Both the position numbers and the translations under genes were made by a program. From NCBI RefSeq assembly GCF_006345805.1, contig NC_043000.1, forward strand, positions 22,196,001 to 22,260,000: DNA of 64,000 bases, written 5' to 3'. Each line of letters begins with the position of its first letter. Position 1 is the stretch's first letter. The stretch is from Octopus sinensis. Taxonomy: Eukaryota. This document shows positions 5,588 to 41,224 of this stretch, piece by piece. Under the pieces are notes generated by a model. The model made no database searches and was not told where the DNA came from. It saw nothing but the letters and a program-made list of their open reading frames with translations.

Positions 5588-5684
5588 CAGGACCACCCTG
5601 AACTCATTGCTGGAGCGCCCTGCATCGAGGACGACGAAGATGGTCACCTGATCTATCACCCGGGAGACGTTCTTCAGGCTCGAT
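5588..5684 (+). CDS. CLK2: CLK exon equivalent to vertebrate exon 4 ([33 protein letters not shown])
   Basis: Conserved DDxxGHLIY motif. Donor GAT|GTACTC at 5685, phase 1, matches the next exon. The start is uncertain: NAGNAG acceptor (5588 or 5591) or an in-frame ATG at 5552. Confidence 0.8.
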
Positions 5685-20600: not shown

Positions 20601-23600
20601 GGAGGTCAATGTTCTGTGCAAGATAGGGGCTCCAAACTGATGATGCGAATTCCAAGTGTGGTCGTACCATAGCTGTATACAGTTTTAAATAGATGGCTGG
20701 AGAGCGGCTAACAAAAGACCTGCTGAGTGATGCCAAGACACCCTCGGCCTTCCTGACAATCTTAGAGATATAATAATCAATCTGTACATAATTGAGAGCA
20801 TGTGCTTGATTGTAATTATTTTCTCATGAAATATGTTTTTCATCTTTGTTTCATATTTTACATTTTCTAGAGGCGAGATATGCGGAGAGTAAAAAATACA
20901 GATATAAGATTAATAGACTTTGGATCTGCAACATTTGATCATGAACACCACAGCACTATTGTATCAACGAGGCATTATAGAGCTCCTGAAGTTATTTTGG
21001 GTAAGTGTATTATAGTTTTCTTTTACTTGGGAATTGCTAGCCTTGTTTATATTTATTGCAGTTTTATAGATAGTTTCTCAGACAATACAAAAGGAATTAA
21101 TTTGTGGCAGCTGGAGAAGTATCGAAAATGATTAGCTTGATAAATGAACCCAACTCCAGACACAATTCAACTGCCAGTACATGACTGATTTATTATTGTT
21201 ACACTATCCATCCATTCAGAAACTTAGGACTTAAAGATTAAAGGGTGAAAATTTGGAAAACGGGTCTTGACATTTTGAAAATATAAAAATGTGATTTATC
21301 ACCACCACCCACTTATATGAAGTGTTTGTCTTTATTGCATGTTATTTTAATTGTACTTTCTGGAATGTTGTGGTTTTTCCAGTAGAAGTTCCGTATTACA
21401 GTTGAAGTGGTAAAATAACTTTAATTTGAATGGATTTAGATTCGAAACTTTTGGAATAAAACTTGGCTAGTTTGGTAAAAGCAATGCACATTCACTTTGG
21501 AATGTGGTTGGTTCCCTATTGAAAATGTTGTCCCGCTGGAGCCCGCATTCTGGATTCACCAGATACTGATGTAATGATTCTAATGATACTTGAGCATTTA
21601 AGTTATCATTTACCTAGTTTTGTGAGTATAAATGGGACAACATGCTGACGAGGTCAGTGCAACTGTAAGTCTTGTTTCTGAGATCAATACACTTAGCTCT
21701 CAACAGACAGATTTACCTGGTTTTAAGTATTGCAGCTATGGTGATTCATCGTCATCGTTGTTTAATGTCTGTGTTCCATGCTAGCATGGGTGGGGCAGTT
21801 TCACAAAAGCCGGCCAGGCAGAAGCCTACACCAGACTTCTATGACTGTTTTGACAGGAATTTTACAGCGGGATGTCCTTCCTAACACCATCCACTCAGCA
21901 GAGTGGACTTAGTGCTTTTTACATGGCACAAGCACAAGGTCAGTTTTGGGAAAGCTTTTACAGCTGGATGCCCTTCTGAACACCAACTACTTTACAGTGT
22001 GGACTGGGTGTTGTTTTAAGTAGCACCTGCACTGACAGGGTCACCAAGTATCTGCAAGACAAAAAAAAAAACCTACTTTCAAGAGGAGAGGGTCATTGGA
22101 GGAAGTGATCTTGTGATCTAGTGTCAGATGATGAAAGGTTATAGTGAGACAGAGACATAGAAACTGTAGAGGAAGTACAGAGAGATCTGTGTACCAACTT
22201 TGATTCTTCACCTGGGCTAAGTTGCAACAATAACTGGAAGTGAACATCAACTAAATATATGCTTGAGATTTTGAGAACAAATGTATCATGATGAGCTAGG
22301 ACTTAATAGCAGCTGTATAAACCATGCCAAAGCAGTCACTGGAGCAAATTCTGTCAAACTACGCAACCCATGCCAGCATGGAACATGATGATAATGAATC
22401 CATTAGTTTTAAATTCCATAAATCTTAGTTGAAACCTTTCAGTGAAATTTTCTTTGCTGACTGTATTTGCCTCATACAGCGATTGACCTTGATCTTAAAT
22501 AAGAAGTAAAGCTAAATTTATTCAGCCCTTACATTAAGAATTTATTTTGTCTTGCAATGATTTGTATTTATCCAGCAATACTTTTTTTGTATTTATATGT
22601 ATGCCAGCATGGAAGGCAGACGTTAAACAATGATGATGATGGATCATTTTTCTGTGTCTCTGCAATAATTTTCTGCATAACTGATATTTTTCTCTTTGTA
22701 ATTTTAGAATTAGGTTGGTCTCAACCCTGTGATGTGTGGAGTATAGGTTGTATCATGTTTGAGCTATACACAGGATACACATTATTTCAGGTAAATTGCT
22801 TTAATTACTTAATTAAATGTTTATTAAATTATATAATAGTATGATGTTTATTAATTAAACTTTTTGGCTATCAAAGGTACACTTACTTGCTATTTGCTTT
22901 TTTACAAGTATTCTTTTCAGCCTCTATATGAATTTTATCCTTAATTTGATTTTACTGTCATTCTTCCAAACTATTATGACTATCTGTTACTGTTGTTCTA
23001 TAGTCAATAGAATAGGCAACATTATTGATTTAGTTTAGTATATTTTCTTGATATTATACATAGACATGCTGACGTGCATTTTTGTTTTTTAATTCTACTT
23101 CTTAGCAAAATGTTATTTTGTTTAATATTATTCTTGTAAATCTTTGTATTTTATCTTAAATATATTTAGTGTGAACACACAATCAACATTGTATTGGTTG
23201 CTTTGACATTTACTTTTTTGTTTTGGGTTAGACACATGACAATAAGGAGCATTTGGCAATGATGGAACGGATACTGGGCAGTATACCATATCGGATGGCA
23301 AAAAGATCTCGGTAAGCTTATTGACTCAGAGTTGATATTGGACATTAGAAAGGATGGCTATAGAACAAAAATTAAACAAAAATCTAACTTAAATAGGTGA
23401 AATAATATTTTAATTGATAAACTATGATTACTTTATAAATATATTTTTCCTAATTTTAAATTTGACAGTAATGTTGAGTGGGGTGGGGTGTTGCATAATG
23501 AATCATTAACATTTATTACAACATATATTACTTTAATTGTTAAGCAATTATATTTGCAAAAGTGTATCATAACATTTCATATTGGTATTTCTTTTTATTA

Positions 23601-23782: not shown

Positions 23783-23831
<49 letters not shown>

Positions 23832-26182
23832 TACATTAGTACATAACTGCCAGGAGATAAAAGCATGCTAGATTTTTTTAGGGTATTAATTTCTTATATA
23901 ATTCAATAGTTAGTTACAATTAATAGTGTAGGGGTAGAATATAGCAATGTAATTACCTGCTTATTAAAAGAATGCAGAAATGTTGAAATGTACTCAAGAT
24001 GTCAATAAAAGTTGTATTAACAATATGATAAAATGATTTCATAAATTAGTTTATACGGTAGTGTCATGGCTCAAATATGAGTGAAGATAAAATGTAATTA
24101 CTTGCATATCAAACAAATTGTCTGTTTTTATAACAGTCCTGTGTTACCCCTTCTTTTAAACTTTAAATTGCATTTTATGAACTGTAGCATTGTTGGTTAC
24201 AGTTTTCCAGTGGGATAATCATTGGTTCACTGTCTATTAACAATGGTGAGAGTGACAAGAGGTTGTCAGTGGAACTTTGGCTGAACAAATAAATACAAAT
24301 TATTTTTGTGTAAAAGCACCAGTTTGTTTGTTTCTCCAAAGTGCAATTAACAAAAAAAAAAAAGACAATTTACATGGGATGTATTTTGTATTCCTGTTGT
24401 AATATTTAGTAAATTTTAAGTGATTGTGTGGCATCTTATGTGATTTACATTTAGTAGATATTACATGAGTCAAAGACATTGTTGATTTTGAAACACAAGT
24501 TTAAGAAAATCCATAAATGATGATTTATTTTCAAATTATAATAACCCTGAAGTAAACTTTAATTATAATAAAATTCACTTGTCATTTTGTTCCTATTGTT
24601 TTAAGAACAAATTACTTCTGGCATGGTCGCCTTGATTGGGACTCGACTACTTCTGCTGGGAGATATGTAAGGGAGAACTGTAAACCACTTTATGTAAGTA
24701 CATGCTCAGCCTTCTCTGTAACTACTACCATAAGTGCACTATAGTGCATGACTTACTATTTTCCAACTGTAAGAAACCACTGAAGTGTATGACGTTTGGG
24801 CAATGTGCCAGCAGGTAACAACTAATTTGTTCACAACACTTTTGGTGTGTTGTCTTTTAGGTAGTAGATACATTTCTAAACTTAAGCTCTTTCTAATGTA
24901 AAATCTCTCTGTTGAAAACAAAGCTTCGTTTTTTGGGGGATAAACAAAATTGCCAAGTTTCATTTATTTATTGTGTAAACTTAATAAAAAAAATGTCCTA
25001 AAATATATAAGCTATTTTCTCAAGGTGATTTTTTTCAAAATTTTCTAAAGTTATATCTGAAGAAGTAAAATCTTATCTTGTAAGCCTTCTTTGGGAGGTG
25101 ACATTGATATTTCTAGAATAGTTATATTTTGGTGTAACTCTATTTTAATCCATTCCCGATTAGATAGTTTCCTATTTACTCTTTCAATAATCTTAATTCA
25201 CAATTTTTAATTTAAGCTCAACATCTAAAATCTTTTCATTGGGGACTAATGTTGTTTACTTGCTTGTTCAAATTTCCTTTCAATTGTTTCTTCAGTTAGC
25301 CATTTAAATTTGGTAGTAGTTGCCAGTGGGGCAATGCATGTGTTTTGTGGATCCTTGAATCTGCCTGCAAGTTCTGTTTGTATTTTTATTCTTCTGACCA
25401 AACTTCTAATTTGTTATTTATTAATCTCCCAGCATATTTAGTACAAACTCTTGGTAATAACCCAAGTTCCCACCCCATAAATTTTTGTCTCTTTAGTTGA
25501 TTAGTTTACCACTTTTCTTTTTGCTGCCAGCATTCATAATTTGTTTCAATACTAATATAACTTACCTTTTATTAGTTGTTTCCATTGAACTGAATGTAGT
25601 TTGACTTGGGTAGCATGCTGCATGGCTATTCTCATTAGCTCATACGGCTTTGTTTGTTTGTTTGTTTTTCTAATCCCTAACCCCACACTCCCCATATTTA
25701 TCTCCAAAGAAAAAGCAAGTATTTCTACCATGGGAAACTGGACTGGGATGAAAAAAACTCATCTGGGCGGTATATTCGGGAAAATTGCAAACCACTTAAG
25801 GTGAGTAACAAGTTATTTAGCTGATTCCTTTTCAAAATGTGTTTAACCAATGGGAGGAGGAGGAGGGGAATTAAAGTTAATATTTCATAATTTTTGTAAG
25901 CATTGTGGATTTGTAATTTACAAATCTCCTTTTACATTGGATTGTTCCAGATAGTGGATTGGCAGAAATAGAGGAGTTTAAGACAAATGCCTTGTGGTAT
26001 TTTGTTATGACTCTTTACAAACCCTGCCGAGTTGAATTTGGCTTTTTATTGTTCTGGGACTGATAAAATAGTATCAGTCAAGTAACATGGATCATTTATA
26101 AACCTCACTAGGATTTGTGCTTATGTTAGGAATGAAGGCAACAACTTAATATGTAAACAGAATACATACACTCACACGTGTA

Positions 26183-26219
<37 letters not shown>

Positions 26220-26386
26220 GGTTGAAATTTACGGAAAAACGAAAGACAAAGACAGGTGTATGAACAACGAGCAGGTGTATTCGTTTGATGCCCTGGAAAG
26301 TGAGAAAGTCTTTTACGCTTAGAGCAGAAAGGAATATGAGGAAATAAACAGAGAGAATAATAAAAACTAGTGGATTTAGCGATCAG

Positions 26387-29400: not shown

Positions 29401-30038
29401 TCCATTCTTTCTGGTGACCATTAACATCATTGTGTCACTGCCCTCTTTATCATAGCCTTTACTGATTCAGTTGGAAAATTTAAGAGAACATGATTTTATT
29501 TAATTGAATCTGAAAATTCTGAAGTTTAATTTTCTGTAGGGAGTATGCAACCAAATCAGTTCATATTAGCATGTTTTTGATAAGTAATTCCTTTCATTCT
29601 CTCTTTATATATATATTGTATGGTTCACTTGAATAACGTCTTTCTATTACTGATCCAAGAGTTAAGATGTCTAAGGGTTTCTCTAGGAAATATGCTTATT
29701 TCAAAAATTGTTGGCATTCTTTCTGCAAGGGGTAAATTCCCTTCTCTGCTTTCATGCTAAACTTCTCAATTTACCCCCCCCCCCCCGGTCTCTCCACAGG
29801 CATTGTTCTCTTTTATTTTTATCTCACTGTCGAACCTTGTTGTCCCCATGCTTGTTACGTCACAAATATGGATGTAATATGTTTTAGCAATATCAAAATC
29901 TTTATACCAGAAGAATTTATCCAGCTCCTTAGGATTAGATCATGTTTGAACCCCCCCCCATACATTTTCATATCATTTTCAGTTAGAGAAACATTCTTTT
30001 ACCAGTATCATATTCGATTGTGTCTATATTACATTTAA

Positions 30039-30069
<31 letters not shown>

Positions 30070-30087
30070 ATATATACATATATACAT

Positions 30088-30118
<31 letters not shown>

Positions 30119-30456
30119 CACACATATATACATATATATATATATACATATATATATACATACATATACATACATATACATATATATACATACATATATA
30201 TATATATACATATATATACATATATATATATATATACATATAATACATATATATACATATATATACATATATACACATATATATATACATATACATATAT
30301 ATATATATATATATACATATATACATATATATATATATACATACATATACATATATACATACATATACATATATATACATACATATATACATATATATAT
30401 ATAACATATATAATATATATATATAATATATATATATACATATATAATATATATAT

Positions 30457-30554
<98 letters not shown>

Positions 30555-30618
30555 TATATATAATATATATATATATATATACATATATTATATATATATA
30601 TATATACATATACATATA

Positions 30619-30651
<33 letters not shown>

Positions 30652-30736
30652 CATATTATATATATATATATTATACATATATATATATATATATAATATA
30701 TACATATATATTATATATATATATATATACATATAT

Positions 30737-30786
<50 letters not shown>

Positions 30787-30813
30787 TATTATATACATAT
30801 TATATACATATAC

Positions 30814-30846
<33 letters not shown>

Positions 30847-31231
30847 CATCTATATATATACATATATAATATACATATATATATATACATATATATATAT
30901 ACATATATATATATACATATATATATATACATATATATATATACATATATATATATACAATATATATATACATATATATATATACATATATATATACATA
31001 TATTATATAATATATATATACATATATATATATATACATATATATACATATATATATTATATAATATATAATATATACATATATATATATATACATATAT
31101 ATATATACATATATATAATATACATATATATATATATACATTATATATATACATATATATATATATACATATAATATATATACATATATATATATTATAC
31201 ATATATATATATATACATAATATATATATAT

Positions 31232-31262
<31 letters not shown>

Positions 31263-31263
31263 C

Positions 31264-31296
<33 letters not shown>

Positions 31297-31319
31297 CATA
31301 TATTACATATATACATGTG

Positions 31320-31353
<34 letters not shown>

Positions 31354-31432
31354 TATATTATACATATACACACACATATATATATATATACATATACACA
31401 CCATATATATATATATATATATATACACATAT

Positions 31433-31470
<38 letters not shown>

Positions 31471-34354
31471 CACATATATATACACATATATATACACATA
31501 TATATATATATACACATATACACATATATATACATATGCACACATACATACGTCCTGTTCATGATTATTATTTTTTTCTTTAGTAAACCTTTCTTGTAGA
31601 AATTTCATTTGAGTCTTTCTTGGAAGAAAGTATCATTTGTGTTTCTGTCAAGGATTATATCAGAATAACATTTGAGATGCATTGTTAATAATAAAAAAAA
31701 AAAATGAACTTGTTCTGTAGATACACTTCTGTTTCATTATGGTAGTTAATGCAAGAAGCCTAGATGTAGAGCCATTATTACTAGTCAATTTATATATACT
31801 GACATACATACCATACAACCATTTAAACCCATTTTTGAAGTGAGCATGTGTGTCCTTTTTGTATGCTTATTAGCAGTGTCTATCTTTAATGTCCCCTTCA
31901 TTTTCATAAGAAAACATTGTAAATTATGTGGATATGTTGCTTGGAAAACAAAACCTTGGCTAGACTAATATTTCATTGCTATGTCCATCCTTTGAAGTTT
32001 TCATATTTGTACCATGTGATGAAGGTATATTAAAAAGACAAAAAAAAGAAAACTGATTTGTTGTGGTATTAGTTGAGATGAAATGATATTCCAAGTTACT
32101 AATATTCAGGTACTAATGTGATTGTGTGCATGAATAGTAAAATATTGATGACTGAAATAATACTATTTGCTTATTTACACCTTCCCTCCTTCCATATTAG
32201 TTTGGTACACCTTGAAAACAAATGTAACCAAGTGTATTTAGTAGCTAGCTCTAGGAATCAGTAATTCCAAAACCATGTGTGTAGATATTATTACATCTTG
32301 CAGCTTTTCTAAGTGGTTCTAAAAATATCATACCTGGATAACTGTTGCTACGGCCAAGGAAAGCAAACATGCCACCAAAAGTCATAGTTATGTTAGCTAT
32401 TTCTCTATTAGATAAAGAATAAATAAATTGGATGGGTGGAAATAATGTTCTTTTCATCAAGAATATAAAAAATTTACATGTCTATTAGAAATTTATTCGT
32501 ATTACAGTTAAAGGTAATATTTGAGGAAACTATTATTAAGAAGAGCAGATTTTCACAGAATATTTTTTATTGTGATATATTTTTTAGAGTTAGCTAGCTT
32601 CTGCTCAACTTTTATTTTTTCTTTGTAAAATTGGTATTTTTTTTTTTTACACTTTAGTTCTTGTGATTTTTGTAGAAAACCATTTCATATTTATATCTAT
32701 TTATAATAAAATAGAAATCTTTTAAGATGTGTAAATTTTAACATATCATCTCAGAGTGTTTAAAGAATACTGTCAAGCTATTTACACCAATTGCTATTTC
32801 AGGGAAATTTTATTAACAGCCTGCTTTCATCATTTTGGTAGTGTCACACTAATTTAAAATAGCTTGGATGTTTTTAATGATTGATGTAACTGACCTATTA
32901 CAGCTTTGCAGAATGGGCAACATCACCAAGTTTAGATACAATAACCTTTTACCAATCCCCTCTATGTGACGTGTGCCTCCCTCTTTCTTCCTTACAGCAC
33001 TATTTAAGAGACAAAGGGATCCAACATCTTCAGCTCTTTGATCTCATTGAAAAGATGCTTGAGTATGAGCCTCATTACAGGATAACTCTTGCAGAAACAC
33101 TTGCTCACCCTTTCTTCAAACCCTTATTAAAAGAGCAACCACATCTAGAGCACAAGCCATCCGTGCCGAAGGAACCAAGGATCGTGGACCGGCGCAAAAG
33201 TTACCAGGGCAGTGAGTTATCATCTGAAAACCATGGTGACCGTGACTGTGTGAAAACAAAGAGTGAGGGTCCAGGCAAATCTGATGTCAGCTACAGCTAC
33301 TTGCCAGGTGATCATCTCCAACATTAATAGTTGCATGGGACTTTAAACTTGAGCATGTTATTCTCCCATTTTCACCCAACCCACCACTTGTATTCACTTC
33401 ACTTCACTTCACATTCATGGTAATGACAGCAGCTATCTCTACCACCAGTATCACTATTACCTCTAATTATCTCTACTAACAGTGAAAAATAATCTGTTGG
33501 AGGGGCGGGGTGTAGGTTATCATTTCAAGTTGTTTGTGTTGCTACTATATTTATTGTCTTTTTTTTTTCTGTAACAATTCAGAATGCAGATAATAATAAT
33601 AATAATAATAATAATATTTACTTCAGTTTTACATTGGATATCTTAACTTTTAATCAAATTTATGTATCACTAAATGATTAGAGCTATTGGCCCTAAGAGA
33701 TTGCCTGGGGTTTGAGTTTGGAACTATTGGCAGAGTATTTGAGGGTACAGACTTCTTACTGCTTATAGCAGTAAGTTGTATCGCTCCGTGGTGTCTATAT
33801 ACAGCTCAGTGACATGGACTGGCCGGAGTTGAGCATCACTTTGTAAATAGATAACTGTCGACAAACTGTGACTCCTTTAACCCCCTCATATTGATCTGAT
33901 GGTCAGTTGCTTGACTTGTCATTAACAGAGGATCAGCCATTTTGACTCGAACCCAGAAAATCAGGTATCTCTTAATGACAATCAGGTGGATGAAGCAAAG
34001 AAAGTTCCATGCTTGGCAATGACCTGAATTTGAAGTTATGACTTACGAGCTTGCAATAGTGCATTACTTAATTCACTCAACCATTTTTTTCCTTCATCTT
34101 TGCATACATCCACACGCTTCGCTTTCACTCATTTCTACACCAAATTAGATACATATGTAGCTCACCTAATTATCACACACTTAAAGATACTCATTTAGAT
34201 TTCTCTTTCTTAATATTGAAGTATCTCTATTCGCACAGGTATTCAAATTAAAATGGTAAAATGGAGTCAAAACTATTAAACTATTCCATCCATTGTATTA
34301 CAGTCAGTTGTTGCAAACTGAATTAAAAGCATAATTCCAGTTTAATATTTACAT

Positions 34355-34396
<42 letters not shown>

Positions 34397-37046
34397 TTTT
34401 TTTATTAGTTTGACGAAAGTTATGCTAATCAACCTAAAATATTCTTGTTCTAAACTTAATTTGTAAAAATATTTTCTCGTACATTATCAACAGTTGGAAG
34501 ATTGTGATTTTGATTCTTATTACAATTTCATTGGCAACCAATCTACCTAAAGTCTGTATTGAGCCATGGCATTCAATAATTTTTAAATGAGAGGTCTCAA
34601 AACATAAGTTCTAGCAATTGGCTGATGCTTGCAAGAATGGAAATCATAATCTCACTGTTAATGATTTTGTGCCTTCTTTAAAACTTTGGCACCAATAATT
34701 CTCTCAGGGTGACCAAGACTATTTTCCACATACCAACTTTATTATATATAAACTGTGTGATGTTTTCTATAATCAGTTTTTATGTAATTTTACTGTCGTC
34801 GTTGTCTCGTGTTTTGCTTTCATAATTGCCTTGCATTGCTGAAATACAATATGAGTTGCTTGTACATTAAGATGGCCAATATGTTGTTGATCATCTGAGT
34901 AGTGCATTATGAAGTATATAACTTTCACAAGACTACAACTGTGAAAAGGATAAATTCAAATTCATTGATTTCCCCACCATGGCCAAGACTTGTTCAAGCA
35001 TCAAGTCTTGATTGGATTATTTGCCTAGTGGTGTACAAAAACAAGAATTTTGTTTTGACAGAGAACACAGAACATCTGCTGTCATAAACTAGTAAAAAGT
35101 ACTGTACAAGTACAGTGAGCAATATGGCTTATTCCTATTAAATCATTCTCATATAATAGCCAATTTGAAAATCAAGTGATTTTCAGATTAACTAGTCACT
35201 GGTTCATCACATTTTTGAGGGCATGAGTGACATGGGAGTGTCTTTAACTCACTGCTGAACCAAAGACTTTAATAAGTACTGCTTCTTGGGATTTTGCTGT
35301 TACATACACATTGGTGAAAGGTATACATGTGTGTGTACAATGCACGAAACTCTTGGCCCTTAAGTCATTCTGTTACTTCTGCTAAGTATTAATTTTACAC
35401 ACACACACTTACAGCAGTTTCTGTTTAACAAATTCCATTTGCAGTGTGTTAGCCAGCTCATGGCAATGATAAAAGACTTACTTGCCCATGAAGACAGGCA
35501 GTGGAGTTGAACCTGGAACTGTATGGTTGCGATATAAACTCCTTATCCACACAACTGTTACTGTTGTGTTTATTTATTGGTCGATAGTGGTAGGAATAGT
35601 ATTTATGCTACAAAAGCAGCTGCCCTAACCTATGGAAACTTTACACGTTTACTGAATCATCCTCTTTGAGAGAAAAACAAACAGCAAATACCATCTAGAG
35701 TAGTTTCCTAATGCAACTTCAAGTGATTTTGACAGTTAAGACATCTGTTGTATTGTAGAATTAGATATCTTAAGTTATATTAGGGGTGGGTGAGAGTTTG
35801 AAATGCTTGACAAATGTCAAGATTTACCTTTGATTTTATTATGAATAGAATCATATAGAAATTGCCATCTTTGTAAAATGACATATGAAGACTAGGATGT
35901 AATCAACATCTTACATATGAATGTTTAAATGATTCTTGTCCAGATCATAAGAAATAACTTCAGGATTAAGCCAGATGTCACCATTGTTTTAACATTAACT
36001 TTTCCATGTTCATATGTGCTGGACAGAATTTGTTAAACTTTCAGTAGTTAAACTGGTCATATCCAACCCAAATGTTCTATTTGTTTTATAACCAAATCCA
36101 GCCTCTTACATTTACTCTAAGATGTTCTTAAAATAATTACATCATTGAAATCTCAAAGCTATGAGATAATACATGATTAATTCAGAACAATGTGAATATA
36201 TGTAAGCAATACATTTCACAGAGTAATCAGAATGCTAAAGGCAGATTTTACTTTGGTTGGATTCCTTTCCTGTCACCAACCTATGCATTTTTGTGCAAGG
36301 TTGGAAAGAAATGACACCAATTACATAGTTTCCATCTACCAAATACTTTTGCAAGGCTTTGGTTGACCTGGAGCTATAGTAGAAAGCTCTTGGCCAAGGT
36401 GCCATGCATTGGTATTGAACTTGAAACCATGTGGTTGGGAAGCAAACTTGTTGCCATCCAACCTTGATTACATAAAAACTTTTTTTTTTCACTTCGAACA
36501 TTATATACTGTAATAGTCAATCAACTATGTTGTTTAGGAACATTATTTATTCAATATGCCATATTTCTTATCAGTTTATCTCAGACTAGTTGCTGTGAAT
36601 ACACTAGTACTTTGCAGGTAGCCATTGTAATTTTATTTGCAATTGCAAATTTTCATAGCTAAATATGCATGCCAAATTAGACAGAAGAATTTCTCATTTA
36701 AAATATTATGAATAAATTTTGTATAATTTTTCTGTTTTGTTTTCCAAGGAAAGCAAGCAAAGTTCTCGACATCGAGATGTTCAGCGATAGCTTTCCTTAT
36801 TTATGTGTATTAGATTATTTGTATTATTTATTTAAAATTTTTTTCTTTTTTTGTTTAAGGTTTTATTTTATATTTTTCATGAATTATGAATAATGTGTGA
36901 TGTCTTCAGCACAAATTATTTATTTCTAATTTTAATGTTTCAATCTGAGTAAAGAAAACAAAAAAAAAAAAATCTTTAAAAATATATTTATTACACTAAG
37001 CACTGAATAATATATGATATTTGAATTGTCATTTTCCCTCTCTCAT

Positions 37047-37101
<55 letters not shown>

Positions 37102-39713
37102 AAAAGTATCGATTATTCAAATATCCTATATTACCAGTTGCTAAATCTTGGTAGATCCTAATTCACTCTATCATTTTCGAGGCAGTGCTCCAACATGGCC
37201 TTACTCAGATGACTAAGACAAGTAAAATATAAGAAATAAATAATTTTTGCTGATGCTAGCCACAACTATTTTCCTCACATTCTGTTTATTCTTAATTGAT
37301 TAAACTCTGGTTTTTCAAGCATTCTAACTTTTTAAAAAATGAGGAAAGTTCATGAAAACAGAGGTTTTGTGTAAAGCATTTCTTATTCATTTTTGTTCAA
37401 AGAAGTGTTTTTTGTTCATTTTTATTCAAAACAACTTACTTTTTCTTTATCTTTTTACCCCATCATTTTGTTCTTAAACTCTTATTAAAACAGCACTAAA
37501 CATTGTTTTTGGAGTTGAAGGAGATTATAGCTGCTGGGTACTGTTCTTTTTAGCATTTAGATGCACAGTTTAATCAAGGGAAAAAAAACCCCAGTAAAAT
37601 TAAATTTAATTTTATGTGACTGATTGAGTAAACAAAACGTCATTATTTTCTATTTAAACAGTTTAATACAGCAAGTACATAGTTGGGATAACTGAATCCT
37701 CATACAAATTTGGATTCCTCATTAATAATACTTCAGTAAACGCATCATTGTAACGACTTAATTTACTCCATAGATTTGACTGAATTAAAAAAAAAACAAA
37801 AATTGATTCCAGCCTTTGCAAGTGTGTGTTTGTGTGTAAAAAAAATAAGTATTTGTTCTTCTGTTGGTTTGTACAGTTTAGATTAGTAGATCATGGTAAT
37901 CCACTCACTCTTCCTGGTCCATCCCTGATGAGTGACATGTTTCCAGTAGATCTGGATTTATGAATGTCTATCATTCTTTAAAGAGGGGAAAAGATTCAAG
38001 TTGTTAGAGAAGGTGATTATGTATGGTTATCTCCATCACCTTTGAGGTAATGAGTGTGGTAGGACAGTAGCTGTGTGGGTTAGAAAAGGTCCCTTTGGAA
38101 TGGGGACATGTGTGCTGAGTTGTATGAAAGTAAGGGACATTGTTAGGATGGCTGAATATAGGTTGAGAGATTTGTGTCAGTGAGTAATAGGATGTATGGA
38201 TCAGTCGACAGATGTTAGAAAAAAGGAAGAAGGATTGTCCTGTGAGTTAGAAAAGAGGAAGAAGGATTGTCCTGTGAGTTGAGGTTGGTCTTTTACTTAT
38301 AGGAAGGTTTAGAGGGTGCCAGTGACATAAGGTGATAATAACTGCTACTGAAAGCATGGCTTGGTCTAAATATTTGCAATGAATCAAAGTCTGCTCCAGG
38401 CCCCCATGAGTCAGGTAGTGGCATTCGATTAATTACCACCCAAAGAAAGAAGAGAGCGCTCTGTGGCATGCACAGGAACTACATTAGATTAATTTCATCT
38501 TAGTCATATGAACACCTGTATTAGTTACCGATAAAATATACCATTGCTTTACAATTATATATAGTAGAATAATGGTGAACATATACAATCTCATAAATAC
38601 TAAACTGTAAGAAAAAAGAAAATAAACAAAACAGTGGTCAGAGGATCACTGAAACTGCAGATATTCAGCTTCAAACTTTGGTGAACCATTTAGACAATTC
38701 ACTGGTTTTTTGTGCCTGCATCTGTCTCAGTTTTGCCTTTTGGGTGGATTTGGTAGATGGAAACTGAAAGAAGCCCATCACATACCTCTGTGTATGTGTC
38801 TGTGTTTGCCCCCTCTTCACCGCTTGTGTTTTTGTGTTTACATTCCTGTAACTTAGCAGTTCAGCATAAGAGACTGATAAAATAAGTACCAGGCTTTAAA
38901 AAAAGAATAAGCACTGGGGTTGATTCATTTGACTATAAACCCTTCAAGTTGGTGCTCCAGCATGGCCACAGTCTAATGACTGAAACAGTAAAAGATAAAA
39001 GATGTGTTTGTTTATTGTTTAGGAAGGAACCTTTTACATGGGTTTTATAGGAGTACAAGATTTAAGAGTTCAAATAATTTTCTTTCATTTTTTTCTTTTT
39101 TATTTCTCTGTCTTTTTCTTTGTTTCTTCCATAATGTTTATCAAATCAAATCCAGAACTGATGATTTAATTTTTTTTTTTCTCTTCTTCACTATTAATGG
39201 TTCTGACCTCAATGGCTTGACTTCTCTGAAGATATATTTCATGTTAATTTCTTTTCTCTTTTCTTTCTTAATGATGGAAAAAAAAAACTCTTATTCAGTA
39301 AAACGTATTCTTTAAAATATCAAGCATGATAAATAAATGCAAGTTCCCTTTATATTTTGGTATCCTACAATTTGCATATAAATTTAATCTGTTTGGACAA
39401 CAGTTTTTCTTTTCTTGTAGTCTCTATTTCATCCTTCAAAATATTGAAAATCAATAATAATATTTTCAGAAAATTGCTTGTATGGTCATATGTTTATTTA
39501 CTTACATTGATGTCTATTTTTCGTTTTTTAATACAGCGGTACATAATGGAGCCCAACAATGAGGACCACGTGCTTCTGTTTGATTTGATTTGGAAGATGC
39601 TACGATATGATCCCCTGGCGCGAATAACACTAAAAGAAGCTTTGAAGGATCCATTTTTTAAAAAGTCCTGCTATTTGGGTGGACGTGCTAGGTCACATAG
39701 TTTAAGTAGATAA
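5588..39713 (+). CDS. CLK2: LAMMER dual-specificity kinase, CLK2-like / Doa ortholog (5'-partial, multi-exon gene span)
   Basis: Exons join in frame through GT-AG sites to give [69 protein letters not shown]. The LAMMER motif is diagnostic. The exact paralog name is by similarity from memory. Confidence 0.95.
7946..8012 (+). CDS. CLK2: CLK exon, Gly-rich loop ([23 protein letters not shown])
   Basis: ttcag| acceptor, AG|GTAGGT donor, 67 nt, phase 1 to 2. Confidence 0.95.
14934..14972 (+). CDS. CLK2: Putative 39-nt cassette exon encoding [14 protein letters not shown]
   Basis: U-rich tract ending tttttgcaag|, donor CC|GTAAGT. Length 3n, phase 2/2 compatible, no stop, CpG-rich in a CpG-poor intron. 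Confidence 0.6.
17585..17701 (+). CDS. CLK2: CLK exon, catalytic Lys and helix C ([39 protein letters not shown])
   Basis: ttttcag| acceptor, TA|GTTAGT donor, 117 nt, phase 2/2. Confidence 0.95.
18766..18856 (+). CDS. CLK2: CLK exon ([30 protein letters not shown])
   Basis: ttcag| acceptor, TTG|GTAAGT donor, 91 nt. Confidence 0.95.
19032..19107 (+). CDS. CLK2: CLK exon ([25 protein letters not shown])
   Basis: ctgcag| acceptor, T|GTAAGT donor, 76 nt. Confidence 0.95.
20024..20118 (+). CDS. CLK2: CLK exon, catalytic loop ([32 protein letters not shown])
   Basis: poly-T tag| acceptor, AAG|GTAATA donor, 95 nt. Confidence 0.95.
20154..20768 (-). mobile_element. 5'-truncated CR1-clade LINE (3' end of ORF2, 3'UTR and (ATT)n tail)
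   Basis: Minus-strand ORF 20224-20736 contains [48 protein letters not shown], typical of the CR1 ORF2 C-terminus. (AAT)n at 20148-20174. Candidate TSD TATAATAAT at 20145-20153 and 20769-20777. Confidence 0.85.
20871..21000 (+). CDS. CLK2: CLK exon, DFG and activation segment ([43 protein letters not shown])
   Basis: ttctag| acceptor, G|GTAAGT donor, 130 nt. Confidence 0.97.
22708..22790 (+). CDS. CLK2: CLK exon ([28 protein letters not shown])
   Basis: ttttag| acceptor, CAG|GTAAAT donor, 83 nt. Confidence 0.97.
23232..23311 (+). CDS. CLK2: CLK exon with LAMMER motif ([27 protein letters not shown])
   Basis: ttag| acceptor, CG|GTAAGC donor, 80 nt, ends in phase 2. Confidence 0.97.
24606..24693 (+). 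CDS. CLK2: Mutually exclusive exon A ([29 protein letters not shown])
   Basis: ttttaag| acceptor, TAT|GTAAGT donor, 88 nt, phase 2 to 0; homologous to exon B. Confidence 0.9.
25710..25800 (+). CDS. CLK2: Mutually exclusive exon B ([30 protein letters not shown])
   Basis: CCCTAAC branch-point consensus at 25676-25682, ccaaag| acceptor, AAG|GTGAGT donor, 91 nt, phase 2 to 0. Confidence 0.9.
26221..26388 (-). repeat. Short interspersed repeat, same family as 56485-56640, hammerhead segment deleted
   Basis: Reverse complement shares ttcctttctg...cgtaaaagactttctcac and ttgttcatacac with the 56.5-kb copy; flanked by (TA)n. Confidence 0.55.
30038..31550. repeat. About 1.5-kb compound (TA)n/(TACA)n microsatellite array
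   Basis: Directly visible; source of the spurious Ile/Tyr ORFs. Confidence 0.98.
32998..33327 (+). CDS. CLK2: Alternative last exon 1 ([40 protein letters not shown] plus a long tail, stop)
   Basis: Pyrimidine tract and ttacag| acceptor, phase 0, kinase subdomain XI, TAA at 33325-33327. Confidence 0.9.
   Translation, partial: HYLRDKGIQHLQLFDLIEKMLEYEPHYRITLAETLAHPFFKPLLKEQPHLEHKPSVPKEPRIVDRRKSYQGSELSSENHGDRDCVKTKSEGPGKSDVSYSYLPGDHLQH
38030..38480 (-). mobile_element. Decayed Penelope-like (Neptune-type) linker fragment
   Basis: Minus-strand remnants [10 protein letters not shown] and KGTF resemble the YHPxNL and GTFPC linker motifs; many lesions. Confidence 0.4.
39537..39713 (+). CDS. CLK2: Alternative last exon 2 ([58 protein letters not shown])
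   Basis: tttttaatacag| acceptor, phase 0; ends in RSHSLSR like Drosophila Doa. Confidence 0.9.
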   Translation, partial: RYIMEPNNEDHVLLFDLIWKMLRYDPLARITLKEALKDPFFKKSCYLGGRARSHSLSR

Positions 39714-40248
39714 TGGACAAAGTAATTCTCCCCCAACATTAAGCACCTCTGACTTGGCATTGTCTTCTAATGGTAACAACCACCTTTGGTTTTCTCTTCT
39801 TCCCTCTGTCTTTCTTCCTGATGAACAACAGTTGTAATACAATGCTAATTGTGTTTGCTAATTTGTTCTGTAAGGTACACGTTAACAGCTATTTAGTGGT
39901 CAGGTTTTAATTTCATCTCAAACTATTAAGATAGCTATTAACATTCACAAAAAAAAATTTTTTTTGAATTAACCTTTTCAACTAAAATGTGGAGGGTGAG
40001 TTTGAAATGTAAAAAGAAGACCGTTTTCCTCCTTTGTACAGTACAAAATATTGAGAGAGAAAAATGTCCTCTCTACACCACATCTTTCCCATCATAGGCT
40101 CCAAAAAAAATTCACAATGAAAAAAATGTGCATACATAGACATTATTAAATATAGAGTGGGTCGAGGCTTGAGCAGAAAACTGGACTGGACTAATTTTAT
40201 TTATATTTTTTTTTTTTATGATGACAAACAGTATTGACAGAATGTGAG

Positions 40249-40404
40249 AATAAAATTTCTTGTTGAGTATGCTGAGTTCAAAATGAGAAATCTCACTTAA
40301 AAAAAAAAAAAAAAAAAAAAAGTTAAACTCTTGCTTCTCAATTAGTATGCAGTGGAAACCATACTAATACAGGTACAGTACGATAAAATTAAAATGTTAA
40401 TAAA
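40249..40404 (+). terminator. Candidate polyadenylation signals for the distal 3'UTR (AATAAA at 40249 and 40399)
   Basis: Two AATAAA hexamers; the second is followed by U/GU-rich sequence. A genomic A23 run at 40299-40321 could cause internal priming. Confidence 0.5.
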
Positions 40405-41224
40405 ACACTTGTACATGAAGTTTATCACATTCACATTTTCCTTTTTTTTTTCCCCCTCCTGTTGTTGTTGTTAAGGTGGTGAGCTTATAGACAAAATGCT
40501 TGGTGACAGTTTGCTTCCAGCTCTTTATATTCTGGGTTCGAATTCACCAAGACCAATTTTCCTTTTTGTCCTTTTAGGGTTGCTATAATCGACTTAACTC
40601 TTCCCTACAAAATTCCGGGCGTTGTGCCAAAATTATTACTGCTGCTGCTGTTATTGAGGCGATCTGGCAAAAATACTTAGCAACATTTTGTCCATCTTTG
40701 CATTCCGAGTTCAAATCCTGCCAAAGTTGGCTTTGCCTATCATTCTTTTGATGTTGATAAAGAAAGTACTAGTTGAGCACTGAGGTGGATGTAATTGGAC
40801 ACCCTCCCCCTCGAAATTGCTGGCTTTGTGCCGAAATTTAAAACCATTATTATTATTATTAAGGCAGTGTGCTAGCAGAATTGTTAGCACTTCAAACAAA
40901 ATGCATAGTAGCATTTAGTCTGATTCTTTATGTTGTGAGTTCAAATACTGATGAGCTCAATCTTTACCTTTCATCTTTTCAGGGTCGATAAAATAGATAC
41001 GAGTTTAGTACTAGGGTTGATGTAATTGGGTCCTTCTGCTCTAAGATTGCTAGCCTTGTGCCAAAATTTGAAAGAATTCTTGTGTGTGTATTGTATTTAT
41101 TTGTATATATTTTTTTTAAACAATAAAACTGAACTTTGTTTTTAATAACATTATTTGAACAGGAAGAAAAGAAAGTAAACACATTAAAACTACTGTTCTA
41201 TATTTAAGAGATGAGGAATTATAT

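What the first reader, a model, noticed from the sequence alone, without database searches (positions are those of the whole stretch)
32998..39713. Two complete alternative last exons give the kinase different C-lobe ends, tails and 3'UTRs
Seen: both exons are phase 0 and encode subdomain XI (FDLI-KML-Y-P--RITL). Exon 1 adds a tail of about 70 aa with an RRKS motif. Exon 2 is short, ends in the Doa-like RSHSLSR and has DPFF for HPFF. Exon 1 is the more canonical in the kinase core while exon 2 keeps the ancestral terminus, suggesting an old duplication with partitioned features. Known: CLK/LAMMER kinase activity is strongly temperature dependent in several species. Inference: an ectotherm could retune the thermal range or localisation by switching tails.
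Basis: partly seen in the sequence, partly recalled or inferred. Interest (0 to 1): 0.7.

Follow-up and report, generated by a model that had tools for sequence, protein, structure and literature searches.

The report
Octopus CLK kinase alternative C-lobe exons
An octopus splicing-regulator kinase gene (CLK2/Doa) has two duplicated exon pairs that let it swap part of its catalytic lobe and its tail; this is real and over 500 million years old, but it works by skipping an internal exon, not by two alternative gene ends, and is already in genome annotations.

Summary
Both exons exist as described and encode kinase subdomain XI in phase 0. The window is the Octopus vulgaris/sinensis CLK2 (LAMMER/Doa) gene.

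"Exon 1" (L1) is not a last exon. L1 is therefore a 310-nt cassette. When L1 is included, L2 is read out of frame (…[11 protein letters not shown]) and serves mainly as a shared 3'UTR. When L1 is skipped, L2 supplies subdomain XI and the RSHSLSR end.

These are mutually exclusive exons for the MAPK-like insert. All four P×L combinations are annotated.

The exon order Pa-Pb-L1-L2 is the same in Argonauta and in the bivalve Mactra. The brachiopod Lingula has Pa-Pb but only one L exon. All four exons are under purifying selection. Conserved (U)GCAUG motifs flank Pa, Pb and L1, which suggests Rbfox-type regulation (inferred, not tested).

The thermal-tuning idea is untested. This is a new member of a known kind. 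Interest 0.35.

The parts
23232..23311 (+). Constitutive exon encoding [26 protein letters not shown](R). It ends in phase 2 (cg|gtaagc) and is the donor exon for Pa or Pb.
   Evidence: 100% protein match in Argonauta.
24606..24693 (+). Exon Pa, 88 nt: (R)[29 protein letters not shown]. First of a mutually exclusive pair encoding the MAPK-like insert.
   Evidence: Present in transcripts L001, L002 and L020 and in isoforms P0177, P0303 and P0309. dN/dS 0.04 against the squid-like relative.
24694..24823 (+). Conserved intronic flank downstream of Pa (89% identical to Argonauta), with UGCAUG at 24745-24750, 52 nt past the exon.
   Evidence: Lingula has UGCAUG 39 and 69 nt past its Pa exon.
25272..25709 (+). 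Conserved intronic block upstream of Pb with three GCAUG motifs starting at 25336, 25613 and 25620; the first and third read UGCAUG. All three are conserved in Argonauta.
   Evidence: Lingula has UGCAUG about 45 nt before its Pb exon, and Mactra has GCAUG at -39 and -261.
25710..25800 (+). Exon Pb, 91 nt: (R)[30 protein letters not shown]. Second of the mutually exclusive pair, and the widespread (arthropod/vertebrate-like) type.
   Evidence: Present in isoforms P0176, P0296, P0310 and P0311. Pa plus Pb together is 179 nt, which shifts the frame and gives an early stop.
32137..32474 (+). Conserved intronic block (80% identical to Argonauta), 520-860 nt upstream of L1. No ORF, no Rfam match, function unknown.
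32998..33307 (+). Exon L1, a 310-nt cassette: subdomain XI ([40 protein letters not shown]) plus a tail of 63 aa with DRRKSYQG and [11 protein letters not shown].
   Evidence: Boundaries come from transcripts and the GT-AG rule. dN/dS is 0.045 for the core and 0.17 for the tail. The tail is predicted disordered.
33308..33391 (+).
   Evidence: Three-species alignment, motif positions.
39537..39713 (+). Exon L2 coding part. In frame after Pa or Pb it gives subdomain XI plus RSHSLSR* (stop 39711-39713). After L1 it gives AVHNGAQQ* (stop 39560-39562).
   Evidence: Isoforms P0303, P0311 and P0297. dN/dS is 0.125 against Argonauta and 0.175 against the squid-like relative in the Doa frame. The shifted frame is full of stops.
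39714..40447 (+). Shared 3'UTR. It is covered by transcript L002 to at least 40142 and conserved with Argonauta to 40447. AATAAA at 40249 and 40399.

Best explanation
The 3' half of the Octopus CLK2 (LAMMER/Doa) gene carries two independent alternative-splicing modules, each built from an ancient tandem exon duplication.

Module 1. Pa and Pb are mutually exclusive exons (88 and 91 nt, both phase 1 in and phase 0 out) that encode alternative versions of the MAPK-like insert just after the LAMMER helix. Including both, or neither, breaks the reading frame.

Module 2. L1 is a 310-nt cassette exon and L2 is the constitutive last exon. If L1 is included, the protein takes its subdomain XI and a disordered tail of about 70 aa from L1. 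Because 310 is not a multiple of three, L2 is then read out of frame for 8 codons (AVHNGAQQ*) and otherwise serves as 3'UTR. If L1 is skipped, L2 is read in frame and supplies the ancestral subdomain XI and the RSHSLSR end. In both cases the stop codon lies in the last exon, so both mRNAs should escape nonsense-mediated decay and both carry the same 3'UTR.

Four protein forms result (2 x 2). They differ in a docking-type surface insert, in the last core helices, and in the regulatory tail.

Shown here: exon structure, splice junctions, all four annotated combinations, purifying selection on each exon, and conservation of the layout.

Inferred: the choice is regulated by Rbfox-type (U)GCAUG elements. 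By the usual Rbfox position rule, the sites downstream of Pa and L1 and upstream of Pb would favour Pa+L1 where Rbfox is active. Also inferred: the forms differ in substrate or partner docking and in tail phosphorylation.
For: - Splice chains. The chain 23311>24606..24693>32998..33307>39537 is seen in L002, and the same chain in L001 and L020/L021.
- Annotated isoforms identical to the window's translation: Pa-L1 (P0177, P0309), Pb-L1 (P0176, P0310), Pa-L2 (P0303, P0297), Pb-L2 (P0311).
- Frame arithmetic and predicted products.
- Selection. dN/dS against the squid-like relative is 0.04 for Pa, 0.045 for the L1 core, 0.17 for the L1 tail and 0.175 for L2 in the Doa frame. The L2 reading frame is intact in Argonauta and in the squid-like relative.
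- Conserved layout. The same exon order is found in Argonauta and the bivalve Mactra. Pa-Pb plus a single L exon is found in Lingula. The L1-type clade has 83% bootstrap. Ruditapes RefSeq isoforms mix the types.
- Conserved flanks. Conserved intronic flanks lie around exactly the alternative exons, not around the constitutive LAMMER exon.
- Motif enrichment. There are 6 GCAUG in 786 nt of conserved flank against 0.8 expected (P=1.8e-4). Their positions are conserved in Argonauta, partly in the squid-like relative and in Lingula.
- Structure. Pa maps to a hairpin plus helix after the LAMMER helix. L1 maps to three helices plus a tail with pLDDT below 50. The C-lobe matches human CLK2 structures up to HPFF..EPPN only.
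Against: - I found no assembled transcript that shows L1 skipping or Pb use. The evidence for these is annotation models (computational, presumably RNA-seq based) plus purifying selection.
- All three transcript assemblies are Pa-L1-L2, so the L2-coded protein may be rare.
- Pb shows 4 non-synonymous and 1 synonymous change between Octopus and Argonauta, including a change in the DWD motif. The numbers are small, but this is compatible with relaxed constraint on Pb in Argonauta.
- The Rbfox reading rests on motif conservation only. In Mactra there is no GCAUG within 500 nt downstream of Pa or L1.
- No RNA-pairing mechanism for mutual exclusion was detected, so exclusivity may rest only on frame incompatibility plus decay of the double-inclusion product.
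Confidence: 0.78

Rival explanations
1. L1 and L2 are two alternative terminal exons, each with its own stop, polyadenylation site and 3'UTR, chosen by competition between splicing and polyadenylation.
For: - L1 has an in-frame stop 18 nt past the internal donor.
- The read-through codons GDH(C)LQH* are readable in Octopus, Argonauta and the squid-like relative, with an in-frame 3-nt indel.
- In Mactra the L1 stop lies inside the exon with no GT next to it, and the annotation ends the gene there. A terminal L1 may therefore exist in bivalves.
Against: - All three assembled transcripts splice 33307 to 39537.
- No retrieved octopod isoform ends in GDHLQH.
- There is no AATAAA for about 900 nt, only ATTAAA from 34247 in unconserved sequence.
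- Octopus-Argonauta conservation stops 64 nt after the stop.
- The conserved stretch contains a donor site and UGCAUG/GCAUG motifs, which explain its conservation without coding.
Confidence: 0.1
2. L2's kinase reading frame is a relic. In octopods L2 works only as the last 8 codons plus 3'UTR, and the annotated L2-coded isoforms are prediction artefacts.
For: - Only L1-containing transcripts were recovered.
- L2 differs more than L1 between close species: 6 differences in 177 nt against 4 in 310 nt.
Against: - dN/dS in the Doa frame is 0.125-0.175 with dS up to 1.1.
- There are no stops in 58 codons in any of the three cephalopod lineages, and the RSHSLSR* end is strictly kept. The frame actually used after L1 is full of stops.
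- L2-coded isoforms are modelled independently in three Octopus annotations and in Ruditapes.
Confidence: 0.07
3. The switch exists to retune the thermal activity range of the kinase in an ectotherm. The L1 and L2 forms, or the Pa and Pb forms, would have different temperature-activity curves and would be chosen according to acclimation temperature.
For: - CLK activity is temperature dependent. Orthologues with identical activation segments have different set-points, so regions outside that segment set the range.
- The MAPK-like insert and the alpha9-eta4 region are named as divergence hotspots (PMC12795684).
Against:
- The same paper points to the N-terminus as the likely contributor.
- The motif pattern found here suggests tissue-type (Rbfox) regulation rather than temperature regulation.
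- The module is shared by animals with very different thermal niches (octopus, clam, and the P pair in a brachiopod).
Confidence: 0.1

Closest known systems
JNK (MAPK8/9/10) isoforms: mutually exclusive exons 6a/6b plus alternative C-termini (p46/p54). Basis: established knowledge, not tested here.
   Same: Both are CMGC kinases. Both have a tandem-duplicated, mutually exclusive exon pair inside the C-lobe that changes a docking-relevant surface. In both, this is combined independently with a second splice choice that changes the C-terminal tail through a frame change, giving 2 x 2 protein forms from one gene.
   Different: In JNK the second event only lengthens the tail. Here it replaces the last core helices (subdomain XI, including the conserved Arg of RITL) with a paralogous copy. 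It does so with a cassette exon that pushes the ancestral last exon out of frame.
Tandem duplicated exon substitution events / mutually exclusive splicing in general (PMC9741552, PMC8373072)
   Same: The exons are adjacent and homologous, with the same phase and nearly the same length. The event is ancient, both copies are under purifying selection, and the flanking introns are conserved. This fits Pa/Pb completely.
   Different: L1/L2 is not a classical substitution pair. The exons differ in length (310 nt against the terminal exon). Exclusivity at the protein level comes from a frameshift into a nearby stop rather than from exclusive splicing, and both exons are present in the major mRNA.
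Known CLK/Doa isoform diversity: Drosophila Doa and C. elegans N-terminal isoforms, and human CLK1 exon-4 skipping and intron retention
   Same: It is the same gene family and a single-copy gene that diversifies by splicing. Alternative N-termini are also annotated for the octopus gene, as in Doa (PMC12795684).
   Different: The described cases change the disordered N-terminus or truncate the kinase. No swap of C-lobe elements is described in the CLK phylogeny/structure paper, where 'mutually exclusive' occurs 0 times, and none turned up in three further literature searches.
Oyster alternative oxidase isoforms from a duplicated exon (PMC5589949)
   Same: This is another molluscan case where a tandem-duplicated exon is alternatively spliced, and it has been proposed to be stress adaptive.
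   Different: It is a different protein with a single exon pair, and I did not examine it further.

Membership tests
CLK / LAMMER (Doa) dual-specificity kinase | [11 protein letters not shown] motif in the C-lobe | tested here: met
   [11 protein letters not shown] is encoded at 23247-23279.
CLK / LAMMER (Doa) dual-specificity kinase | Complete catalytic core (HxDLKPEN, DFG, APE) with best matches to CLK proteins and structures | tested here: met
   [11 protein letters not shown] and RHYRAPE exons are present. The translation is 100% identical to O. vulgaris/sinensis CLK2 models. The best PDB hit is human CLK2, E 1e-40.
CLK / LAMMER (Doa) dual-specificity kinase | Arg/Ser-rich disordered N-terminal domain | tested here: inconclusive
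   It is present in annotated full-length isoforms (MPKSRRRRRSPSRDS...), but those exons lie upstream of the window. Only a 39-nt RS microexon (14934-14972) is inside the window.
Mutually exclusive exons from tandem exon duplication (Pa/Pb) | Adjacent homologous exons with the same phase and similar length | tested here: met
   88 and 91 nt, both phase 1 to 0, about 65-68% amino-acid identity, 1016 nt apart.
Mutually exclusive exons from tandem exon duplication (Pa/Pb) | Mature mRNAs carry one exon or the other, never both | tested here: inconclusive
   Three transcripts carry Pa only. Annotated isoforms carry Pa or Pb, never both. Double inclusion gives a frameshift and an early stop. No transcript with Pb was recovered directly.
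Mutually exclusive exons from tandem exon duplication (Pa/Pb) | Both copies maintained by selection across lineages | tested here: met
   Both exon types are present in the same order in Octopus, Argonauta, Mactra and Lingula. The Pa type is also found in a Lineus protein. Pa dN/dS is 0.04. Pb is less clear in Argonauta.
   Transcripts splice out of L1 at 33307 before the stop. There is no AATAAA for about 900 nt. No retrieved isoform ends in GDHLQH.
   L1-containing transcripts continue through L2 and its downstream UTR to at least 40142.
Frame-shifting cassette exon giving alternative C-termini (L1) | Internal exon, length not a multiple of three, with a functional acceptor and donor | tested here: met
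   32998-33307 is 310 nt, with boundaries ccttacag| and |gtgatc. The junctions are seen in three transcripts.
Frame-shifting cassette exon giving alternative C-termini (L1) | Both the inclusion and the skipping products are translated into functional protein | tested here: inconclusive
   Both reading frames are under purifying selection and both are annotated. The skipping junction was not seen directly, and there is no protein-level data.
Rbfox-regulated alternative exons | Conserved (U)GCAUG within a few hundred nt of the regulated exon | tested here: met
   Motifs about 50 nt past Pa, about 90, 97 and 374 nt before Pb, and about 25 and 46 nt past L1 are conserved between Octopus and Argonauta. 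The first L1 motif is also in the squid-like relative, and Lingula has equivalents near Pa and Pb. Enrichment P=1.8e-4.
Rbfox-regulated alternative exons | Exon choice changes with Rbfox activity | not testable with these tools
   This needs tissue RNA-seq, minigenes or a knock-down.

The most novel reading that the evidence does not exclude
Lophotrochozoan CLK genes carry a two-module isoform switch more than 500 million years old. One module swaps the MAPK-like insert (Pa/Pb, present from brachiopods to cephalopods). The other swaps subdomain XI plus the tail (L1/L2, mollusc-wide). Both would be co-ordinated by Rbfox-type intronic motifs, so that neurons and muscle make a Pa+L1 kinase with different docking, tail phosphorylation (RRKS) and possibly a different thermal set-point from the ancestral Pb+L2 (Doa-like) form. 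A master regulator of splicing would then itself be retargeted by tissue-specific splicing.
Probability: 0.2. Interest if true: 0.6.

Novelty: new member of a known kind. Interest (0 to 1): 0.35.

Why it matters
CLK kinases phosphorylate SR proteins and set splicing programmes. They are also the best-characterised protein thermosensors for splicing. Molluscs have a single CLK gene (PMC12795684), so any functional diversification has to come from isoforms.

Two things stand out about this gene:
- It keeps four selectable C-lobe exons in the same order from clams to octopuses, and the P pair is also in a brachiopod. Alternative core-helix and insert versions have therefore been useful for a very long time.
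- It offers natural "domain-swap" variants for asking which parts of a CLK outside the activation segment set substrate choice, regulation or thermal range.

It is also a clean example of a cassette exon that replaces a core structural element by pushing the ancestral last exon out of frame without creating a decay target.

The practical consequence for annotation is that L1 must not be taken as a terminal exon, and that L2 can be mis-called as a separate gene, as in the Mactra annotation.

Tried and rejected
1. Metagenome/metatranscriptome scan with the Pb+L2 peptide. It returned only distant CLKs (64% identity or less over multi-exon matches; the 86% hits covered only the 29-aa Pb segment) and no L1-skipping transcript of a close relative.

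2. The short-query protein searches listed nothing longer than about 1.75 times the query and missed the 431-aa product of L002, so absences in them mean little. The full-length query was needed to reach the octopus isoforms.

3. Exact-product look-ups failed for Ruditapes X1, Lineus X2 and O. vulgaris Pa-L2. As a result I have no genomic layout for Ruditapes or Lineus and no contig for the L2 isoform.

4. Third subdomain-XI exon (L0). I searched the octopus window and Argonauta for the exon seen in the squid-like transcripts. There is no separate homologue, only L1 and L2.

5. Competing RNA structures between conserved intronic blocks, as a mechanism for mutual exclusion. The duplex energies are no better than shuffles (z from -2.1 to +1.9). 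The inverted-repeat scan was swamped by (TA)n microsatellites. The first duplex script timed out.

6. Rfam on the whole window: 0 hits.

7. Pfam on the L1 exon product and on a repeat-like ORF: 0 hits.

8. U12-type or steric explanations for Pa/Pb exclusivity. I rejected these from the sequence. All donors are GT with U2-like consensus, and the Pa-Pb intron is 1016 nt.
Full report
**What the window is**

The region is AT-rich eukaryotic DNA with long introns and microsatellites. A CLK/LAMMER kinase gene lies on the + strand. It has exons carrying HTDLKPEN (about 20047), DFG..RHYRAPE (about 20900), DVWS (about 22730) and [11 protein letters not shown] (23247).

A full-length query gave Octopus vulgaris and O. 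sinensis "CLK2" isoforms whose sequences are identical to the window's translation. The window is therefore the Octopus vulgaris/sinensis CLK2 (Doa orthologue) locus. Its RS-rich N-terminal exons lie upstream of the window.

**Checking the observation**

- L1 starts at 32998 after ccttacag. It encodes [40 protein letters not shown], then a tail with DRRKSYQG.
- L2 starts at 39537 after aatacag. It encodes [58 protein letters not shown].
- Both are entered in phase 0.
- They are clear paralogues: 21 of 40 aligned residues are identical, with reciprocal tblastn E about 1e-9.

**What the transcripts show**

Two searches with the C-terminal peptides led to assembled RNAs.
- L002 is a Logan assembly from SRR3401912, about 99% identical in coding exons. 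It is a close relative, presumably a congener.
- L001 and L020/L021 are from JGI marine metatranscriptomes, 75-93% identical. They come from a more distant cephalopod, which I call squid-like.

All of them have the chain LAMMER exon > 24606-24693 > 32998-33307 > 39537 onward.

It is an internal exon of 310 nt. Since 310 = 3x103+1, L2 is then read one base out of register. This gives ...[14 protein letters not shown] with the stop at 39560-39562, and the rest of L2 is 3'UTR.

There is no AATAAA within about 900 nt of the L1 stop, and Octopus-Argonauta conservation ends 64 nt after it. After L2, conservation runs to 40447, with AATAAA at 40249 and 40399. "Two last exons with different 3'UTRs" is therefore not what the sequence and the transcripts show.

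**L2 is nevertheless a coding exon**

Its kinase frame is open over all 58 codons and ends in RSHSLSR* in Octopus, in Argonauta (L022) and in the squid-like RNA. The frame used after L1 is full of stops.

Nei-Gojobori estimates in the kinase frame give dN/dS 0.125 (Octopus-Argonauta) and 0.175 (Octopus-squid-like, dS about 1.1). This is similar to the L1 tail (0.17) and somewhat above the L1 core (0.045-0.146). Such constraint requires mRNAs in which L1 is skipped.

These mRNAs are annotated. Pa-L2 is found in O. vulgaris (P0303) and O. bimaculoides (P0297). Pb-L2 is found in O. sinensis isoform X11 (P0311). I could not recover an assembled transcript with that junction. This is the main gap in the evidence.

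**A second duplicated exon pair**

The exon before L1/L2 also exists twice.
- Pa is 24606-24693, 88 nt: (R)[29 protein letters not shown].
- Pb is 25710-25800, 91 nt: (R)[30 protein letters not shown].

Both enter in phase 1 and leave in phase 0. Including both (179 nt) or neither shifts the frame to an early stop. Annotated isoforms have one or the other, and all four P x L combinations occur. The three assembled RNAs all carry Pa.

**Where the exons map on the protein**

The C-lobe aligns to human CLK2 crystal structures (E 1e-40), but only as far as HPFF..EPPN.

An AlphaFold model of the Pa-L1 isoform has moderate quality, with mean pLDDT 57 because the N-terminal and C-terminal regions are disordered.
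- The LAMMER helix is at residues 414-424.
- Pa (437-465) is a short hairpin plus the start of a helix.
- L1 forms three helices (473-485, 496-500, 503-511).
- The L1 tail (516-576) has pLDDT below 50.

Pa/Pb thus correspond to the MAPK-like insertion. The CLK phylogeny/structure paper names this insertion as one of three divergence hotspots (PMC12795684). L1/L2 replace the last core helices (subdomain XI) and the tail.

**Age of the duplications**

- Argonauta hians has the order LAMMER, Pa, Pb, L1, L2, with all frames intact.
- The bivalve Mactra antiquata has the same five exons in the same order. There, L2 was annotated as a separate small gene.
- Ruditapes RefSeq isoforms combine Pa-type with L2-type, and Pb-type with L1-type.
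- The brachiopod Lingula has Pa-type and Pb-type exons in that order but a single L exon with RSHSLSR.
- A nemertean (Lineus) protein uses a Pa-type exon.
- Arthropod and vertebrate sequences in the hit lists have only the Pb type.

In a neighbour-joining tree of the L exons, the L1-type exons of cephalopods and bivalves form a clade with 83% bootstrap. The mollusc L2 exons group with the ordinary last exons of other phyla.

The P duplication therefore predates the mollusc-brachiopod split, and the L duplication predates the cephalopod-bivalve split. L2 is the ancestral exon and L1 the derived copy.

The claim that L1 is more canonical in the core holds only narrowly. Over LFDLI..PFF, L1 is 72% identical to outgroups and L2 is 67%. 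L2 is closer to outgroups in the first 13 residues.

**Regulation (inferred)**

Octopus-Argonauta conservation hugs the constitutive LAMMER exon tightly. Around the alternative exons it extends much further: 130 nt downstream of Pa, 440 nt upstream of Pb, and about 80 nt on each side of L1. There is also a 340-nt intronic block at 32137-32474.

These flanks hold six GCAUG motifs in 786 nt, where 0.8 are expected (Poisson P=1.8e-4). All are at conserved positions in Argonauta: about 50 nt past Pa, about 374, 97 and 90 nt before Pb, and about 25 and 46 nt past L1. The first motif after L1 is also present in the squid-like genomic contig L025. Lingula has UGCAUG about 40 and 70 nt past Pa and about 45 nt before Pb. 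Mactra has GCAUG only upstream of Pb.

From established knowledge of Rbfox proteins, binding downstream of an exon promotes inclusion and binding upstream represses it. This layout would then favour Pa and L1 and disfavour Pb where Rbfox is active. This is an inference from motifs, not a result. It also offers a non-coding explanation for the conserved GDH..LQH* stretch after the L1 donor.

I found no support for competing RNA structures.

**Likely mechanism and function**

Shown: two independent splice modules, a mutually exclusive pair and a frame-shifting cassette, give four kinases. In all four the stop codon lies in the last exon, so none should be a decay target, and all share one 3'UTR.

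Inferred: the forms differ in a docking-type insert and in the regulatory tail. L1 carries the conserved basophilic site motif DRRKSYQG and the motif [11 protein letters not shown], with tail dN/dS 0.17. L2 carries the RSHSLSR end, which is found in 98 of the 236 retrieved CLK sequences that carry the LAMMER motif.

On temperature, the literature says the activation segment is the core of CLK thermosensitivity. It also says the set-point depends on other regions, with the N-terminus suggested as a contributor. None of the four exons touches the activation segment.

**Comparison with what is known**

Pa/Pb fit the definition of a tandem duplicated exon substitution (PMC9741552, PMC8373072). The closest functional analogue is JNK, another CMGC kinase. 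JNK has a mutually exclusive exon pair in the C-lobe combined with a frame-dependent alternative C-terminus, giving four isoforms (my knowledge, not tested here).

The differences from JNK are that the second module here swaps core helices rather than only the tail, and that it does so with a cassette exon that demotes the ancestral last exon to 3'UTR.

Known CLK/Doa isoforms differ at the N-terminus or are truncated. I found no paper describing C-lobe exon swapping in CLKs or in molluscan CLK.

**Verdict**

The feature is real and under selection, and the isoforms are already present as computed models in public annotations. It is also incomplete, because the Pa/Pb pair was missed.

I rate it a new member of a known kind, of moderate interest (0.35). 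The deep conservation and the position in a master splicing kinase make it a reasonable target for a small experimental study.

Noticed in passing
L020/L021 1441-1628 (JGI 3300018952 metatranscriptome contigs): The squid-like relative has a third subdomain-XI exon, L0 ([51 protein letters not shown]), between Pa and L1. The assembled RNA is Pa-L0-L1-L2, so the stop in L0 lies two junctions upstream of the end and the RNA is predicted to be decay-sensitive. There is no separate homologue in the octopus window or in Argonauta. In the exon tree L0 groups weakly with bivalve L1 (54%).
   Followed up: partly
window 14934-14972: An optional 39-nt microexon encodes [13 protein letters not shown](P). 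It is inserted after VKDVA in the N-lobe in some annotated isoforms (for example O. sinensis X1/X2) and is absent in others and in transcript L002. It also appears, in a diverged form, in the squid-like protein P0179.
   Followed up: partly
window 32137-32474: A 340-nt intronic block is 80% identical between Octopus and Argonauta. It has no open reading frame on either strand and no Rfam match. It could be a splicing regulatory element or an unannotated non-coding exon.
   Followed up: partly
window 5371-5590: Transcript L002 begins in what is intron for the RS-domain isoforms and starts translation at an ATG at 5552 ([18 protein letters not shown]...). The same short N-terminus is annotated in O. 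vulgaris (P0176, 432 aa). It points to an internal promoter or a retained intron, giving a kinase without the RS domain.
   Followed up: no
window 29990-31600: About 1.6 kb of compound (TA)n/(CA)n microsatellite lies in the Pb-L1 intron (GC 14% over 30-32 kb). Further (TA)n runs at 23794-23829 and 26182-26232 flank the Pa/Pb pair and are mutually complementary. I did not find them among the conserved Octopus-Argonauta blocks.
   Followed up: partly
window 20224-20736 (- strand): A 170-aa ORF lies in the intron between the HTDLKPEN and DFG exons (…[15 protein letters not shown]…[12 protein letters not shown]…YSERL…L.LRR…). From memory it looks like the C-terminal part of a non-LTR retrotransposon reverse transcriptase, but Pfam gave no hit.
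   Followed up: partly
L002 against window, for example 39624, 39662, 23300, 17639: Several of the few differences between the related-species transcript and the genome are A>G. One would change Ile to Val in the L2 kinase frame. These could be species differences or A-to-I RNA editing, which is common in octopus. Without that species' genome the two cannot be told apart.
   Followed up: no
L023 57229-58132 (Mactra antiquata): In the Mactra annotation the L2-type exon is called as a separate 111-aa gene downstream of CLK2, and L1 is treated as the terminal exon with an in-exon stop and no adjacent GT. L1 may be truly terminal in bivalves, or the annotation may be incomplete.
   Followed up: no
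window 38860-38990 and 40695-41029: Repeat copies (…gataaaataagtacc…, …gagttcaaatc…) resemble, from memory, the abundant tRNA-derived SINE of octopus genomes. Two diverged tandem copies are at 40731-40798 and 40962-41029.
   Followed up: no
P0223 (Dreissena polymorpha isoform X2): Its P-exon region reads KQRYFSSSGKVRDADRNWYVRDNCKPL and lacks the LDWD motif. This is either a strongly diverged Pb-type exon or a mis-modelled one.
   Followed up: no
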